A stretch of 64,000 bases of DNA, from positions 124,001-188,000 of IMG/VR virus record IMGVR_UViG_3300042359_000853. The stretch is one strand, 5' to 3'. Every line of letters begins with the position of its first letter. Positions within the stretch are counted from its first letter, which is position 1. Shown one piece after another: positions 48,754 through 56,398 of this stretch. Made by a program: the position numbers and the translations under genes. Under the pieces are notes generated by a model that saw only the letters and a list, made by a program, of their open reading frames with translations, did not search any database and was not told the DNA's origin.

Positions 48754-49103
48754 TGGTGGAGGTGCTGGGATTCGAACCCAGGTTTCTACATTTACCTAAA
48801 TAATCAATCATTCACAAGCTTAGAACTCTTTTCTAAGAGAACCAACTATCGGATTTTATCGAAGAACCTTCCGAAAAAACTTTTGAGGCTATTTATAGAG
48901 TTACCTCATTCTCGGAAACGTCTAGGCTACGGCCAATCTGTTTGCCTTTAGGATGTTGTTGCGTAGGGCGAATACTAAGTCTTCAACGCTTCCTACTTCA
49001 TTCGTGTTGCCACTTAAAGTTTTCATACAACTTATGAATCGGTGAGTATGATCCGATGCTTGCTTGATTACCCGAATAAATGAGTCAAAAGCCATTCACC
49101 CCC
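48754..49103 (-). ncRNA. ssrA: tmRNA
   Basis: 5' GGGGGTGAATGGCTTTTGAC, 3' GGGTTCGAATCCCAGCACCTCCACCA; 7-bp acceptor stem with G3.U wobble and encoded CCA; internal tag ORF 48922-49011 ending LAVA*. Confidence 0.93.
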
Positions 49104-52005: not shown

Positions 52006-53322
52006 ATGTCAAAATTAGTAAACTTGAACACAATCAGTGATTCAGACCAAATCGATAAGATCTTGGATTCTGATCTGATGATATTTGAAGATGTTCAAGG
52101 ATCAAAAATATTAGTTCAATGGGATGGTGAAAAATTCACGATAAAACCAAAATCTTTATCTTCAGAACCTATCAACCTAGTTGATTTAGCTATGCAGAAC
52201 TATTATAACGCGGCTTTTGACTACCTTAATTCGTTAGATAAAAGAGTGAAAACATTACTCAATAAAAAGTGGTGGTATGTTTTTGAGTATTTCTCTGATA
52301 ATCAACCTGCTAATATAGCTTACACAAGAACCCCAAAAAACGGATTAGTTCTAACATCCATCATTAAAGGTCGTGATTATAACTATACTATCGAGGAGCT
52401 TGATGAATATTCCAGACTTTTCAATGTTGATCCTCTGCCGATTATTTTTCGGGGAAGACTTTCACAAAAAACAAGAGAAGCTATTAAATATTTTCTCAAC
52501 ACCTCTGAGAAAGATTTAGAATATGTTTTTGGTGAAAAATCTTTTGCTTTTTTCTTTTACAAAATACTTAACCCTAACACACAAAACTCTTTTCTGATGG
52601 AAGATGAGTTTCAAAATAATCTAGAAAAACTGATTATTAAAACACCAGATACCGAAACAACATTTGCTATCTTAAATCCACTCTATAAAAAAATATCTGA
52701 TAATGGATCTACTGAATTTGTTGAAGTATATACTCTTATTTTAGTTAACTTTTTGAGTTTTTGTCAATCCGTGGATCTGAAACGTATAAAGTTGGATGCC
52801 ACCAATCGTGAAGAAGCCTATATTAGCCTAATATGTAAACTATTTAATGTGTATATGACCGAGGTTAAATCTGATGTTTTAGATTTTGAGTTTACGATAC
52901 CTCATTTTTTCAATAAAGATAAGTTTAAAATAAATCGTGAGCTTATTTCTGATGTAGCTACAAAGAATATTATCTCACAAGATCCGAAAATAGAATATAT
53001 CTTCAAAGTGGTCCTGGGATCATTCAACAGAAAAAAGAAAAAACCGATTGGTGTTTTTAATAATAATACCTTAAATCTTTTCAATAATTTTGTAGATACT
53101 TTAGAAGCTCGTGTTGATGAGTATCTTAACAAAAAATCAGAAATAGAACTCACCAAAAAGGGTCTTCTAGATTTTAGTGATTATTTTGATATTAAATATG
53201 ATACTGATTCACAAGGTCAAGTTTATCCAGATGTCTATAAAGAGTTTGAGAAGGGAGCTGATGAGAAATCTAAAAAAGATAAATCACCAAAAGGATTCTC
53301 AATTCCAGAAAAAAAACCTTGA
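52006..53322 (+). CDS. RNA-ligase (Rnl2-like) fold protein lacking catalytic lysines
   Basis: IFEDVQGS at motif I position, VFEYF (III), PIIFRG, EKLIIK (IV), FAILNP (V). Confidence 0.5.
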   Translation: MSKLVNLNTISDSDQIDKILDSDLMIFEDVQGSKILVQWDGEKFTIKPKSLSSEPINLVDLAMQNYYNAAFDYLNSLDKRVKTLLNKKWWYVFEYFSDNQPANIAYTRTPKNGLVLTSIIKGRDYNYTIEELDEYSRLFNVDPLPIIFRGRLSQKTREAIKYFLNTSEKDLEYVFGEKSFAFFFYKILNPNTQNSFLMEDEFQNNLEKLIIKTPDTETTFAILNPLYKKISDNGSTEFVEVYTLILVNFLSFCQSVDLKRIKLDATNREEAYISLICKLFNVYMTEVKSDVLDFEFTIPHFFNKDKFKINRELISDVATKNIISQDPKIEYIFKVVLGSFNRKKKKPIGVFNNNTLNLFNNFVDTLEARVDEYLNKKSEIELTKKGLLDFSDYFDIKYDTDSQGQVYPDVYKEFEKGADEKSKKDKSPKGFSIPEKKP

Positions 53323-53345
53323 ACTTTTAATCTATAATATCATAC
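53322..53345 (+). promoter_or_regulatory. Representative putative middle promoter AACTTTT-N12-CATAC
   Basis: Same 19-nt AAC-to-CATA offset as the motifs at 55182-55204 and upstream of gp52 (34587-34610, minus). Confidence 0.5.
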
Positions 53346-53444
53346 CTATTAGGTATTATAAATAATTATATTTTTTATAGTAAAATATAGAAAAAAAGTT
53401 GAAAAAATACTACTTTACAGATTTATATTTTAATATATAGATCT

Positions 53445-54014
53445 ATGAAATATAAAGTAAGTGAATATGCTAAATTGAAAAACGTTACCTACCGAACCGT
53501 TTGGAACTGGATAAAATCAAATAAGATAGACTATCAAACTACAAACACCGGTGGTCTGGTTATAGTTGAAGAAGATCCCAATTCAAATAAAGAGGTAGCA
53601 GTTTATGCTCGTGTTTCTTCATCAGAGAATAAAGATAATCTAGAAAGACAGAAAAATAGATTATTGGACTATTGTGCTTCTAGAGGATATAAAGTTTCTA
53701 GTATAGTAACAGAGATTGGATCTGGATTGAACGATAAAAGACCAAAATTAGAAAAAATTCTAACAAATAGATCTATAAGTATAATTGTAGTTGAACATCG
53801 GGATAGATTATCAAGATTTGGATTTAATTATATAGAAAAACTATTAAATTCAAATGATAGAAGGATAGAGGTAATAAATGAGCCTCTTAATGAAAAAGAA
53901 GATTTAATACAAGACTTTGTATCTATAATTACTAGTTTTACCGCTAGATTGTATGGACAAAGAAGAAGTAAAAGAAGAACCGAATTTCTTATAAAAAATC
54001 TACAAAGTGAATGA
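53445..54014 (+). CDS. tnpA: IS607 transposase (MerR-like HTH + serine recombinase)
   Basis: VTYRTVWNW; VYARVSS..LERQ; EIGSGLN; EHRDRLSRFG; ARLYG. Confidence 0.95.
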   Translation: MKYKVSEYAKLKNVTYRTVWNWIKSNKIDYQTTNTGGLVIVEEDPNSNKEVAVYARVSSSENKDNLERQKNRLLDYCASRGYKVSSIVTEIGSGLNDKRPKLEKILTNRSISIIVVEHRDRLSRFGFNYIEKLLNSNDRRIEVINEPLNEKEDLIQDFVSIITSFTARLYGQRRSKRRTEFLIKNLQSE

Positions 54015-55180
54015 TCCTAGTTGAAAAGCACATAATTAGATCAGGTAAATATTTCAATCAACTAATGGAAGTTACTAGATTGAGTAAAAATCTTTATAAT
54101 TCTGGTTTGTATGCTGTGAGGCAGCACTATTTTGAATACAAGAAGTTCTTAAATTATGTAAATCTTAATAATATGTTTGTTGAACAGAAACAACAAGATT
54201 ATTACAAACTACCAGCAAAGGTTAGCCAACAAACACTGAAAATGGTGGAACAAAATTTCAAATCATTTTTTGGATTACTAAAATCTGAAAAAACTAAAAA
54301 GGTAAAAATACCTAAATATCTGGATAAAAATTCCAGTTTTTTAACAATTTGGACAAATCAAGCAGTTTCTCTCAAAAAGAAGGGTTACTTAAAGCTATCA
54401 GGAACTGATGTCTATATCAAAACAGATATTGATCATATCAATCAAGTTAGAGTTGTTCCTAGAAATAATGAGTTAGTAGTAGAGATATTATATGAAGTCC
54501 GGGAAAATGATTTAAAGAAAGATAACGGAAAATATTCATCTATAGATCTTGGCATCAATAATCTCATGACTTTATCGGGAAACACAACAAAACCTATTAT
54601 AGTCAATGGGAAACCACTAAAATCTATTAATCAGTATTACAACAAGAAAAAATCCGAAATTCAGGGTAAATTAGAAACAATCAACAAAACAAAAAAGAGC
54701 AAAAAATTAAATAAACTAACAAACAAAAGAAACAACAAAATAAATGATTATCTACACAAATCAAGTAAAATAATTATCAATCATTTAGTTTCCAAAGATA
54801 TATGTACTTTAATAGTTGGATACAATCAATACTGGAAACAAGAGATAAATATTGGAAAAAAGAATAATCAGAATTTTGTTTCAATTCCCTATCTAAAATT
54901 ATTAAATATGTTAGAATACAAATGTAAAAAAGAAGGCATTAACTTTGTCAAAAACGAGGAGAGTTATACATCCAAGTGCTCGTTTATAGATGGTGAGGAA
55001 ATTAAAAAACATACAAAATATTTAGGTAAAAGAATAAAAAGAGGATTATTCGAGAGCGCGTCTGGTAAATTGATAAATGCGGATTTGAATGGATCTCTAA
55101 ATATTCTCAAAAAAGTAGTTGGGGAATTTCAGTACCCAATAGAGGTGTGTAGCACGCCAAAAGTTATTAATTTAGCTTAG
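54011..55180 (+). CDS. tnpB: TnpB RNA-guided endonuclease
   Basis: SKNLYN, SIDLGINN (RuvC-I), DYLHKSS, EESYTSKC, NADLNGSLNI (RuvC-III). Confidence 0.95.
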   Translation: MILVEKHIIRSGKYFNQLMEVTRLSKNLYNSGLYAVRQHYFEYKKFLNYVNLNNMFVEQKQQDYYKLPAKVSQQTLKMVEQNFKSFFGLLKSEKTKKVKIPKYLDKNSSFLTIWTNQAVSLKKKGYLKLSGTDVYIKTDIDHINQVRVVPRNNELVVEILYEVRENDLKKDNGKYSSIDLGINNLMTLSGNTTKPIIVNGKPLKSINQYYNKKKSEIQGKLETINKTKKSKKLNKLTNKRNNKINDYLHKSSKIIINHLVSKDICTLIVGYNQYWKQEINIGKKNNQNFVSIPYLKLLNMLEYKCKKEGINFVKNEESYTSKCSFIDGEEIKKHTKYLGKRIKRGLFESASGKLINADLNGSLNILKKVVGEFQYPIEVCSTPKVINLA

Positions 55181-55216
55181 AAACTTTTTCTATGGATTTC
55201 CATAAAATTAGTAGCT

Positions 55217-56374
55217 ATGAACAAGGATTATTTACTTCACCATTATCCAACCTATTTAGATAGATATTTTTCTGGGAAAACTATAAAATTTCGAGATCAA
55301 ATTTTGAAGCGTGATTATTTTGTTCATCTGATCTCTTCGCTACTTACTAAATATTATTACACTAAAGAGAACGAGTTCAAGTTGAATGCTACTATCTTAA
55401 GAGAAACTTATGGTAAGTGGTATAACTATTATATGGAATATTTAGTTCATAACGGTATTCTTATTGTTTATAAAAATCATCAAAGGGGTAGGCGGTCAAG
55501 AATCTACCAGCTCTCTATCTCTATCTTAACGAGTCCTGTAAGTAGATATCTGAATGGTGATGAGATTTTGTTGAAAAAAAGAAAAAAATGGACAGATTAT
55601 AATCTCAAATCAAGTGAATCACCTATTTGTATGGAGATAAGACAAAGGTTGATAGAAGATTTATATAGCGTTCAAATACAATATGATAAGGCTTGTTTTG
55701 AACTCTTATCAAAAGAACACCTCTCTCGAGTTGAACTTGAAAGAAATAACTTCGCGGTGGAATGTATTCGTGAAGGCGAAATCTATTTTCACTTTGATGA
55801 TTATGGAAGATTTCACACACCTTTCACTATACTTCCCAAAAACGTTAGAAATAACTGCCTTACTATTCAAAATAGTGATATCACAGAGATTGATATACCA
55901 AACTCACAGCCACTATTCCTTCTAAAACTCATTCAGATGAATAGGCACATTCCGATAGAAGAGGTAGAGTATGAACTATTCTCAGAATTAGTTAGAGATG
56001 GAGTTTTCTATAAACATCTTTCTAAAATCTCTGGAAATAAAAATGTTAAAGAAGTGAAAAAAAATGTTTTTGAGATCTTTTTCGGACATAATAATCAAAA
56101 CTCTACATCTAGATTATTTTCTGGTTTTTTTCCAAGTATCTTTAATTTTCTAAGGGTCATTAAAAGGGAACGTGGTGATTACCGATGGGTTTCCCATCAA
56201 CTACAAAGATTAGAATCAGATTTTATTTTCAATAAAGTTATTAAAAAAATCTATAGTAGAGATCCCAATATCAAACTATTCACGGTTCATGATAGTATTT
56301 TTTGTAGAAAAGATAGGGTTGGGTTTGTAGATAACATCTTTATTTCAGAAATAAAAAAAGAGTTTGATTTCTAA
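55217..56374 (+). CDS. Compact family-A polymerase-palm-like protein
   Basis: GRFHT, EIDIPNSQP (motif A), KEVKKNVFEIFFG (motif B-like), LQRLES, TVHDSI (motif C). Confidence 0.6.
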   Translation: MNKDYLLHHYPTYLDRYFSGKTIKFRDQILKRDYFVHLISSLLTKYYYTKENEFKLNATILRETYGKWYNYYMEYLVHNGILIVYKNHQRGRRSRIYQLSISILTSPVSRYLNGDEILLKKRKKWTDYNLKSSESPICMEIRQRLIEDLYSVQIQYDKACFELLSKEHLSRVELERNNFAVECIREGEIYFHFDDYGRFHTPFTILPKNVRNNCLTIQNSDITEIDIPNSQPLFLLKLIQMNRHIPIEEVEYELFSELVRDGVFYKHLSKISGNKNVKEVKKNVFEIFFGHNNQNSTSRLFSGFFPSIFNFLRVIKRERGDYRWVSHQLQRLESDFIFNKVIKKIYSRDPNIKLFTVHDSIFCRKDRVGFVDNIFISEIKKEFDF

Positions 56375-56398
56375 TCTTCTTTTTTAATATATACCTTC

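What the first reader, a model, noticed from the sequence alone, without database searches (positions are those of the whole stretch)
53322..55236. IS607 inserted between a promoter and its gene; its right end recreates that promoter
Joining the two ATTAG junctions gives an empty site GAACTTTT..CATACCTATTAG|TAGCTATG, i.e. the AAC-type promoter directly before the 55217 start. The element's right end carries AAACTTTTT..CATAAAATTAG with the same 19-nt offset, restoring expression. tnpA itself is preceded by the phage late motif. This looks like a phage-adapted, phenotypically silent IS. The predicted omegaRNA guide (TAGCTATGAACAAGG...) would cut IS-free alleles, enabling homing between co-infecting phages.
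Basis: partly seen in the sequence, partly recalled or inferred. Interest (0 to 1): 0.75.

Follow-up and report, generated by a model that had tools for sequence, protein, structure and literature searches.

The report
IS607-type transposon at a phage start codon
A 1.86-kb IS607-family transposon (serine transposase plus the RNA-guided nuclease TnpB) sits exactly on the start codon of a gene in a huge freshwater phage, but its right end does not rebuild that gene's promoter, so this is an ordinary phage-resident insertion sequence with slightly unusual ends.

Summary
The element is real. tnpA (53445-54014) is an IS607-family serine transposase and tnpB (54011-55180) an RNA-guided TnpB. Two other insertion sites of the same IS (95-98% identical), three right flanks of a tnpB-only derivative, and empty sites in two related phages fix the element at 53357-55218 (1862 bp). 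A TAT is shared at both junctions and the target is RGTAT, not ATTAG and not the canonical IS607 GG. The empty site reads ...TTAGGTAT|GAACAAGG, so the crossover lies on the ATG of the 385-aa gene.

The promoter-restoring idea fails:
- The left-flank/right-end resemblance is at chance level.
- AACTTTT is not enriched upstream of genes.
- The phage's real gene-start motif (T-rich tract + ATATATA) scores 7.9 bits in the native flank and -1.4 bits in the right end.
- The right-end sequence is the same in every copy, whatever lies downstream.

Supported: tnpA carries a near-perfect copy of the phage's gene-start motif, and the 3' end of tnpB has conserved helices expected of an omegaRNA. The corrected guide starts at 55219, with inferred TAM GTAT. 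The downstream gene is most likely expressed by read-through, if at all. Homing is plausible but untested. IS607 elements in phages are already known.

The parts
52006..53322 (+). Upstream phage gene (438 aa, no family match); its TGA stop overlaps the start of the native intergenic region
   Evidence: ORF list; no Pfam, PHROG or NCBIfam hit; orthologues at 94% and 66% identity in related viral contigs
53319..53340 (+). Native gene-start motif of the 385-aa gene (T-rich tract + CTATAAT), now displaced upstream of the IS and pointing into it
   Evidence: 7.9 bits on the phage motif model; 1.1% of random 48-mers score as well; conserved in the empty sites L004 and L005
53353..53356 (+). Target GTAT at the left junction; TAT (53354-53356) is the sequence shared with the right end (the crossover lies within it)
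   Evidence: Empty sites read ATTGGGTATGAAT; the left flanks of the eight further sites (two of the same IS, six of relatives) also end in GTAT
53357..55218 (+). IS607-family insertion sequence, 1862 bp (the right-hand TAT is counted as part of the element)
   Evidence: Independent copies share window 53350-55218 (98.1%, L117-L123) and 53353-55218 (95.1%, L140/L141) and nothing outside it; single copy in the 227.6-kb record
53422..53443 (+). Copy of the phage's gene-start motif (TTTATATTTTAATATATAGATC) directly before tnpA
   Evidence: 15.9 bits, rank 4 of 224 genes, 0 of 4000 random 48-mers. Genome-wide, 64 of the 91 hits of at least 12 bits lie within 40 nt upstream of a gene start
53445..54014 (+). 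tnpA, IS607-family serine transposase (189 aa)
   Evidence: NF033518 transpos_IS607, 189.3 bits against cut-off 110, full length; PDB 6dgc ISC1926 TnpA 1.7e-32 and 6dgb IS1535 4.5e-31; phrog_6620
54011..55180 (+). tnpB, RNA-guided nuclease (389 aa); overlaps tnpA by ATGA; rearranged RuvC site (D179, G270 in place of the canonical Glu, E317, D358)
   Evidence: NF040570 guided_TnpB 182.6 bits; Pfam; invariant columns in an 18-sequence alignment; the profile aligns D179 with the RuvC-I Asp of ISDra2 TnpB; the Glu-to-Gly rearrangement with an alternative Glu is described in PMC10691335
55044..55218 (+). Predicted omegaRNA scaffold: helices 55044-55054/55084-55095, 55118-55123/55135-55140 and 55144-55149/55153-55158, the terminal hairpin 55185-55207, and the conserved tail TAGCTAT 55212-55218
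   Evidence: RNAalifold on 9 right ends: 23 pairs, 5 with compensatory changes; single-sequence folds z -3.1 and -2.4; all relatives end in TARCTAT. Expression not shown
55219..55238 (+). Predicted guide-encoding flank (GAACAAGGATTATTTACTTC), which is codons 1-7 of the 385-aa gene
   Evidence: First bases after the fixed right end; unique in the 227.6-kb record, next best match has 3 mismatches in 16. Inference by analogy with IS607 TnpB systems (PMC10711439, PMC10690162)
55217..56374 (+). Downstream phage gene (385 aa, unknown function); its ATG is rebuilt from the element's terminal AT plus the flank's G
   Evidence: ORF; orthologues lie directly after the 438-aa gene in L004 and L005 with about 50 nt between them; no motif hit of at least 6 bits on the + strand between 53841 and 56237

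Best explanation
An autonomous IS607-family element (tnpA serine transposase, tnpB RNA-guided nuclease, predicted omegaRNA in the 3' end of tnpB and the right end) belongs to a lineage that lives in freshwater huge phages. It inserted by serine-recombinase crossover at a TAT inside the target AGGTAT, and that TAT overlaps the start codon of a 385-aa phage gene. Both element ends carry TAT, so the ATG is regenerated, but the gene has lost its own 5' region. That region now lies 1.86 kb upstream and points into the IS. The element is co-oriented with its neighbours. The 385-aa gene is therefore most likely transcribed, if at all, by read-through from the displaced native signal and from the strong phage-type signal in front of tnpA, not from a promoter in the right end.

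Shown: identity of the genes, the ends, the TAT/RGTAT rule, the empty site, the lack of a motif in the right end, and the conserved RNA helices.

Inferred: read-through expression, omegaRNA production, a guide starting at 55219, and the TAM GTAT. The TAM inference rests on the one base that always differs between target (G at -4) and right end (C at -4), which would spare the occupied allele.
For: Genes.

Ends: the same IS at two further sites and a tnpB-only derivative with three different right flanks all break at exactly 55218, and on the left after GTAT. A 58%-identical relative with four independent sites shows the same rule. Four further relatives end in TARCTAT next to flanks ending in GTAT.

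Empty sites: two related phages have them.

Phage motif: ATATATA lies upstream of 80 genes out of 177 genomic copies. Motif scores are tnpA 15.9, native flank 7.9 and right end -1.4 bits. There is no + strand hit of at least 6 bits between 53841 and 56237. The four genes 438 aa, tnpA, tnpB and 385 aa are all on the + strand, and tnpB's stop is 36 nt from the ATG.

omegaRNA: three helices with 5 compensatory pairs. In L140 a C-to-T change in the right-end hairpin keeps a G-U pair.

TnpB catalytic residues are conserved.

The insertion is found in the same context in the 17 contigs read, and the exact TnpB protein is indexed in 105 blocks of the collection.
Against: No transcript data exist for this phage: the one RNA-labelled run is probably DNA and holds a different copy. 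Read-through, omegaRNA production and TnpB activity are therefore unproven. Two weak terminator-like hairpins lie inside tnpB (54112, 54320; 2 found against 0.7 +/- 0.8 in shuffles) and could limit read-through. The phage 'gene-start motif' is only assumed to be a promoter; it could be a translation or processing signal. The empty sites come from relatives whose downstream gene is only 73% identical, so the ancestral site of this lineage is inferred, although the rule from the other sites agrees. The TnpB zinc finger is degenerate (a single Cys), so activity is not guaranteed.
Confidence: 0.7

Rival explanations
1. One reading: the IS landed between an 'AAC-type' promoter and its gene, and the right end carries a copy of that promoter (AAACTTTTT...CATAAAATTAG) that restores expression, making the insertion phenotypically silent.
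For: The quoted strings exist, with AACTTTT-to-CATA spacing of 19 nt in both. AACTTT occurs 32-35 nt before the ATG in 7 of its 40 upstream occurrences, the right-end copy included. The 385-aa ORF is intact in all copies.
Against: The junctions are misplaced, so the register to the ATG differs (33 against 35 nt). The similarity is at chance level. AACTTTT and GAACTTTT are not enriched upstream of genes, and the positional clustering of AACTTT ranks 41st of 129 hexamers. The right end scores -1.4 bits on the phage's real motif and has no + strand sigma-70-like site. The same right end is present where the next gene is convergent, and AAACTTTTT forms the 5' arm of a right-end hairpin that is also seen in relatives.
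Confidence: 0.07
2. The insertion uncoupled the 385-aa gene from expression. The gene is dispensable, or only weakly expressed, and stays intact because the insertion is recent or because selection is weak.
For: There is no recognisable gene-start motif within 1.4 kb upstream on the + strand. The gene has no known function. The occupied contigs are 99.5-100% identical, which suggests a young haplotype.
Against: The gene family is conserved in many huge-phage contigs at about 37% identity. The ORF is intact in every occupied contig that was compared over it. Co-orientation and the 36-nt gap after tnpB make polar read-through easy.
Confidence: 0.2
3. The flank/right-end resemblance reflects target choice: TnpA prefers targets that look like the element's own right end over about 30 nt.
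For: A short resemblance is real and general: every target ends in RGTAT and every right end in RCTAT.
Against: Beyond those 5 nt the other left flanks do not resemble the right end. 6.4% of all RGTAT sites match the right end as well as this one does. Published IS607 transposases show little target preference beyond the core (PMC6188088).
Confidence: 0.05

Closest known systems
IS607 (Helicobacter pylori), IS1535 (Mycobacterium tuberculosis), ISC1926: the IS607 family
   Same: Serine transposase that matches the family model over its full length. tnpA overlaps tnpB. No terminal inverted repeats and no target duplication. Short identical core at both ends and at the target.
   Different: The core is TAT (target RGTAT, right end RCTAT) instead of GG/(G)GG. 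The sequence is AT-rich and the element is resident in phage genomes.
CboIStron and IS607 TnpB 'restorative homing' (PMC10690162)
   Same: TnpB plus an omegaRNA spanning the right end. The TAM equals the transposase target motif. The guide is the right flank. This is the expected basis for any homing here.
   Different: No group I intron (no Rfam hit), so there is no RNA-level silencing. The published TAM is TGGG; here GTAT is inferred. Nothing has been tested experimentally here.
ISXfa1 TnpB (PMC10711439)
   Same: An IS607 TnpB in which nucleotides fixed by the crossover belong to the scaffold and not to the guide. By analogy TAT is scaffold here and the guide starts at 55219.
   Different: ISXfa1 uses GG and a GGG TAM. 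The boundary here is an inference.
RuvC-II-rearranged TnpB branches (RIIr; PMC10691335)
   Same: The canonical RuvC-II Glu is replaced by Gly (G270), with an invariant alternative Glu (E317) six residues before the former zinc-finger Cys. That paper notes that some such branches are concentrated in viruses.
   Different: Assignment to a particular RIIr branch was not tested. The zinc finger is reduced to one Cys.
IS607-family elements already annotated in phages (Thermus phage TMA, Clostridium phage c-st ISCbt4, Nodularia, Microcystis and Lactobacillus phages)
   Same: TnpA relatives in 38 GenBank phage records, the best 49.7% identical; PHROG families 6620 and 506.
   Different: None is close (all under 60% identity). 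This lineage is known only from lake metagenomes.
Insertion sequences with outward-facing promoters (for example IS10 pOUT or ISAba1; from general knowledge)
   Different: No promoter-like signal was found in this right end.

Membership tests
IS607 family | TnpA is a serine recombinase of the IS607 type (family-specific model over the full length, catalytic domain like IS1535/ISC1926) | tested here: met
   NF033518 equivalog 189.3 bits against cut-off 110, profile positions 2-187 of 187; PDB 6dgc 1.7e-32 and 6dgb 4.5e-31
IS607 family | tnpB immediately downstream of tnpA on the same strand | tested here: met
   tnpA 53445-54014 and tnpB 54011-55180, with an ATGA overlap
IS607 family | No target-site duplication and no terminal inverted repeats | tested here: met
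   Comparison of empty and occupied sites shows only the shared TAT. The best left-end/right-end inverted match is not better than shuffles (59 of 500)
IS607 family | GG core dinucleotide at both ends and at the target (true of 'most' members, PMC13565253; strict in IS607 and CboIStron, PMC6188088 and PMC10690162) | tested here: not met
   The shared core is TAT. Targets are AGGTAT, AAGTAT and TAGTAT, and the right end is AGCTAT. The same holds in relatives
IS607 family | Short subterminal repeats that bind TnpA | tested here: inconclusive
   ATAG-containing repeats are seen in both ends but are not significant in this AT-rich sequence
IS607 family | Circular double-stranded DNA intermediate and scarless excision | not testable with these tools
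   The raw-read runs did not contain the phage, and no joints were reported
TnpB / OMEGA RNA-guided nuclease | RuvC catalytic triad | tested here: met
   D179, E317 (alternative position) and D358 are invariant in 18 sequences. D179 aligns with the ISDra2 RuvC-I Asp. G270 occupies the canonical Glu position. The role of E317 is inferred from PMC10691335 and PMC13565253
TnpB / OMEGA RNA-guided nuclease | Conserved structured RNA spanning the tnpB 3' end and the right end | tested here: met
   Three helices, 23 pairs, 5 with compensatory changes across 9 right ends. No Rfam family matched. Expression not tested
TnpB / OMEGA RNA-guided nuclease | TAM 5' of the empty-site target that coincides with the transposase target motif and is absent from the occupied allele | tested here: inconclusive
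   GTAT in all left flanks against CTAT in all right ends fits the requirement, but no cleavage data exist
IStron (IS607 + group I intron) | Group I intron inside the element | tested here: not met
   No intron family at the gathering threshold or at E up to 10
IS with an outward promoter | Promoter signal in the end facing the adjacent gene | tested here: not met
   Right end -1.4 bits on the phage motif; no + strand sigma-70-like site in 55100-55216; no hit of at least 6 bits. No TSS data

The most novel reading that the evidence does not exclude
A phage-resident IS607 lineage has retuned both of its machines. The TnpA crossover core is TAT instead of GG, and the TnpB TAM is GTAT, discriminated from the element's own CTAT end by one base. 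Its transposase is under the phage's own gene-start signal. It uses TnpB/omegaRNA cleavage of IS-free alleles to home between co-infecting huge phages, that is, as an RNA-guided counterpart of phage homing endonucleases. The tnpB-only copies with three different right flanks could be footprints of such activity.
Probability: 0.25. Interest if true: 0.6.

Novelty: new member of a known kind. Interest (0 to 1): 0.3.

Why it matters
As written, the finding would have described a new way for a transposon to be harmless, by carrying a replacement promoter. That part does not hold. What remains is a well-delimited, probably active IS607/TnpB element in an uncultured huge phage, with several independent insertion sites, a non-GG core (TAT) and an inferred GTAT TAM. 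This is useful as one more data point on how transposase core and TnpB TAM co-vary, and as a candidate for testing RNA-guided homing between phages. IS607 elements in phages, TnpB homing in IS607 and rearranged RuvC sites are all published, so the result mainly refines annotation.

Tried and rejected
2. Search for an IS-free allele of this phage lineage: pattern scans of viral contigs and metagenome contigs found nothing. The 9 hits of the looser pattern were unrelated chance matches.
3. Other copies through the right-end pattern in viral contigs: only the same insertion. Megablast against GenBank phages: no match.
4. Transcript evidence: the only RNA-labelled run is probably DNA and holds the tnpB-only variant. 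Two raw-read DNA runs lacked the phage. No joints were reported.
5. Rfam: no omegaRNA, RAGATH or intron family for the element.
6. Single-sequence PDB search with TnpB: no hit. A profile was needed.
7. Subterminal inverted repeat between the left end and the AACTTTTTCTAT of the right end, as a TnpA site: seen but not significant for this element (59 of 500 shuffles). Only the 58% relative was suggestive (6 of 500).
8. The RNA pairing of the tnpB-stop region with the TAGCTAT tail predicted for the window is not conserved in relatives (read), so it is not claimed.
9. AACTTT positional clustering at -35 to -32: real in count (7 of 40) but unremarkable against other hexamers.
10. Exact empty site for the L140 insertion in the window's own genome: the homologous region (G000 about 108,100) is too diverged to give base-level confirmation.
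11. The count of structure pairs controls on the omegaRNA helices were not run, because they would have required typing a long structure string.

Full report
CONTEXT. The window is bases 124001-188000 of a 227,583-bp IMG/VR virus record that CheckV rates about 39% complete, so it is a fragment of a huge phage. Runs that hold the sequence are freshwater and lake metagenomes. GC content is about 29-37%. The window also carries a tmRNA gene.

WHAT IS AT THE COORDINATES. Between a 438-aa ORF (52006-53322) and a 385-aa ORF (55217-56374), both on the + strand and without family matches, lie two genes.
- tnpA (53445-54014, 189 aa) matches NCBIfam NF033518 'IS607 family transposase' over the whole model (189 bits, cut-off 110). 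It also matches the catalytic domains of the ISC1926 and IS1535 transposases in the PDB (1.7e-32 and 4.5e-31).
- tnpB (54011-55180, 389 aa) matches NF040570 'RNA-guided endonuclease TnpB' (183 bits) and Pfam OrfB_IS605 plus the Cas12f1-like TNB domain.
The two genes overlap by ATGA. The element is single-copy in the record.

THE ENDS. Two related viral contigs (upstream protein 94% identical, downstream protein 73-74%) have the 438-aa and 385-aa genes about 50 nt apart, with the intergenic sequence TGAACTTTTA...ATAATATCATACTTATTGGGTATGAAT. Against the window, left-flank homology continues through GGTAT (to 53356) and right-flank homology starts at TATGAA (55216).

Independent copies settle the matter. 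A protein search found near-identical TnpBs, and their contigs showed three things:
- The same IS at a second site (L117-L123, 98.1% identical over window 53350-55218).
- The same IS at a third site (L140/L141, 95.1% identical over 53353-55218).
- A tnpB-only derivative (window 53987-55218) with three different right flanks.
Every copy ends at ...TTAGTAGCTAT| (55218). The full copies begin after a flank that ends in GTAT (AGGTAT here, AAGTAT and TAGTAT elsewhere).

A relative with 58% TnpB identity has four independent sites with the same rule: flanks end in AAGTAT or TGGTAT and the element ends in GTAACTAT. Four further relatives at 63-76% identity end in TARCTAT next to flanks that end in GTAT.

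The element is therefore 53357-55218 (1862 bp, counting one TAT). TAT is shared by both junctions, the target is RGTAT and the right end is RCTAT. The canonical IS607 core is GG (PMC6188088, PMC10690162, PMC13565253), so this lineage departs from the usual core.

THE EMPTY SITE. It is ...CATACCTATTAGGTAT|GAACAAGG.... The TAT overlaps the ATG of the 385-aa gene. The insertion is on the start codon, which is regenerated because the element also ends in TAT. The gene has lost its entire native 5' region.

IS THERE A PROMOTER, AND DOES THE RIGHT END RECREATE IT? I called 224 ORFs in the 227.6-kb record and looked for upstream signals.
- The dominant signal is ATATATA: 80 genes carry it in their 60-nt upstream region out of 177 genomic copies, about 15-fold enrichment. 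It usually starts 11-14 nt before the ATG and follows a T-rich tract.
- A weight matrix built from 40 such sites (tnpA and the 385-aa gene left out) gives 91 genome hits of at least 12 bits, and 64 of them lie within 40 nt upstream of a gene start.
- On this matrix the tnpA leader scores 15.9 bits (top 4 of 224 genes; 0 of 4000 random 48-mers).
- The native flank TTGAACTTTTAATCTATAATAT scores 7.9 bits (1.1% of random).
- The right end in front of the 385-aa gene scores -1.4 bits (24% of random score as well).
- No + strand hit of at least 6 bits exists between 53841 and 56237, and the sigma-70-type scan finds nothing on the + strand in the right end.

AACTTTT lies upstream of 12 genes out of 235 genomic copies (6.9 expected) and GAACTTTT of 3 out of 59. 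Its clustering near -35 is ordinary among hexamers (rank 41 of 129).

The flank/right-end similarity has a Smith-Waterman score of 10. That score is equalled by 19 of 223 other gene upstream regions and by 6.4% of all RGTAT sites.

The right-end sequence is also the same (0-2 base changes) in all copies, including those followed by convergent genes.

WHAT THE RIGHT END IS INSTEAD. AAACTTTTTCTATGGATTTCCATAAAA folds into a hairpin. Relatives have a hairpin in the same place, followed by the conserved tail TARCTAT. In L140 a C-to-T change keeps a G-U pair. Upstream, in the last 175 nt of tnpB, RNAalifold on nine right ends finds three helices (23 pairs), five of them with compensatory double changes. 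The region folds better than shuffles (z = -3.1). This is the anatomy expected of a TnpB omegaRNA scaffold, although no Rfam family matches and no RNA data exist.

By analogy with ISXfa1, where crossover-fixed nucleotides belong to the scaffold (PMC10711439), the guide should start at 55219 (GAACAAGGATTATTTACTTC). This sequence is unique in the record.

The one base that always distinguishes the target (G at -4) from the right end (C at -4) suggests a TAM that includes GTAT. That would let TnpB cut empty alleles but not occupied ones. This is inference.

TnpB ACTIVE SITE. D179 and D358 are invariant. The canonical RuvC-II Glu position holds an invariant Gly (G270). An invariant Glu (E317) lies six residues before the only remaining zinc-finger Cys. 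This is the rearranged arrangement described for RIIr branches and for Fanzor-like TnpBs, some of which are enriched in viruses (PMC10691335, PMC13565253). The nuclease is plausibly active.

HOW THE DOWNSTREAM GENE IS EXPRESSED. All four genes are co-oriented and tnpB's stop is 36 nt from the ATG. The simplest reading is polar read-through from the displaced native signal and the strong tnpA signal. Two weak terminator-like hairpins inside tnpB and competition with omegaRNA processing could reduce it. The alternative is that the gene is now poorly expressed and dispensable, and this cannot be excluded. The exact TnpB protein is indexed in 105 blocks of the collection, and all 17 contigs read carry it in this same context. 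No IS-free allele of this lineage was found.

HOMING. TnpB-driven restorative homing is established for IS607 elements (PMC10690162). Phage-to-phage homing is a reasonable extension but has no support here. The available empty alleles (L004, L005) differ from the guide at most positions, so this omegaRNA would not cut them.

KNOWN OR NEW. IS607-family transposases occur in 38 GenBank phage records, including Thermus phage TMA at 49.7% identity, Clostridium phage c-st ISCbt4, and Nodularia, Microcystis and Lactobacillus phages. They also have their own PHROG families. This is a new member of a known kind. Its modest points of interest are the TAT core with the RGTAT target, the phage-type signal in front of tnpA, and the insertion exactly on a start codon.

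Noticed in passing
L124/L127, L125, L139 (aligning to window 53987-55218): A tnpB-only derivative (no tnpA, no left end; it starts inside the 3' end of tnpA right after a 418-aa gene) has three different right flanks that all begin exactly at the right-end boundary (CTCATTTT, TTCATCAC, AATATTTATG). In L125 the two genes that follow in L124 are missing. This suggests rearrangement or deletion at the right end, either by trans-acting TnpA, by recombination between copies, or by repair after a TnpB cut.
   Followed up: partly
L034-L042 (viral contigs of about 100-160 kb): The 58%-identical relative sits inside the first approximately 10 codons of an ORF in L035 and L040 (MKFIIIPKEV|SEEKRR...). 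L034, L039 and L041 carry an extra 12 nt (ATGATTCCGTAT, again ending in TAT) between the right end and that ORF. The same element is found at three other sites in L036-L038.
   Followed up: partly
window 48754-49103 (-): Phage-encoded tmRNA (Rfam 65.3 bits, full length) with a long unusual tag, GNTNEVGSVEDLVFALRNNILKANRLAVA.
   Followed up: no
window 55178-55219: The tnpB stop codon (TAG, 55178-55180) and the ATG of the 385-aa gene are in the same reading frame, 12 sense codons apart. This is probably coincidence, but stop read-through would fuse the two proteins.
   Followed up: no
window 53341-53356 plus 55219; L004 4242-4258; L005 5645-5661: The native site is a small hairpin, CATACC-TATTA-GGTATG, whose 3' arm contains the start codon. 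It is kept in both empty-site relatives (CATACTTATTGGGTATG). The insertion splits it. It could be a translational control element.
   Followed up: partly
whole record G000; for example window 53422-53443 and 56376-56397: Gene-start motif of this phage: a T-rich tract, then ATATATA, then 5-8 nt, then ATG. 41 of 224 ORFs have TATATA starting 9-18 nt before the ATG, and a second group has it at 25-30 nt. The polymerase or factor that reads it is unknown.
   Followed up: partly
L141 and L005 (both sample 3300020200); L127 and L004 (both sample 3300047551): Samples that hold the empty 438/385 junction in a related phage also hold copies of this IS at other sites (a full copy in L141, tnpB-only in L127). 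IS-bearing and IS-free relatives therefore co-occur, which is a precondition for any homing.
   Followed up: no
G000 about 108,100-108,320 (outside the window): The window's own genome has the region homologous to the L140 insertion site (flanks about 76% identical) without the IS, but with about 215 nt of unrelated intergenic sequence there.
   Followed up: partly
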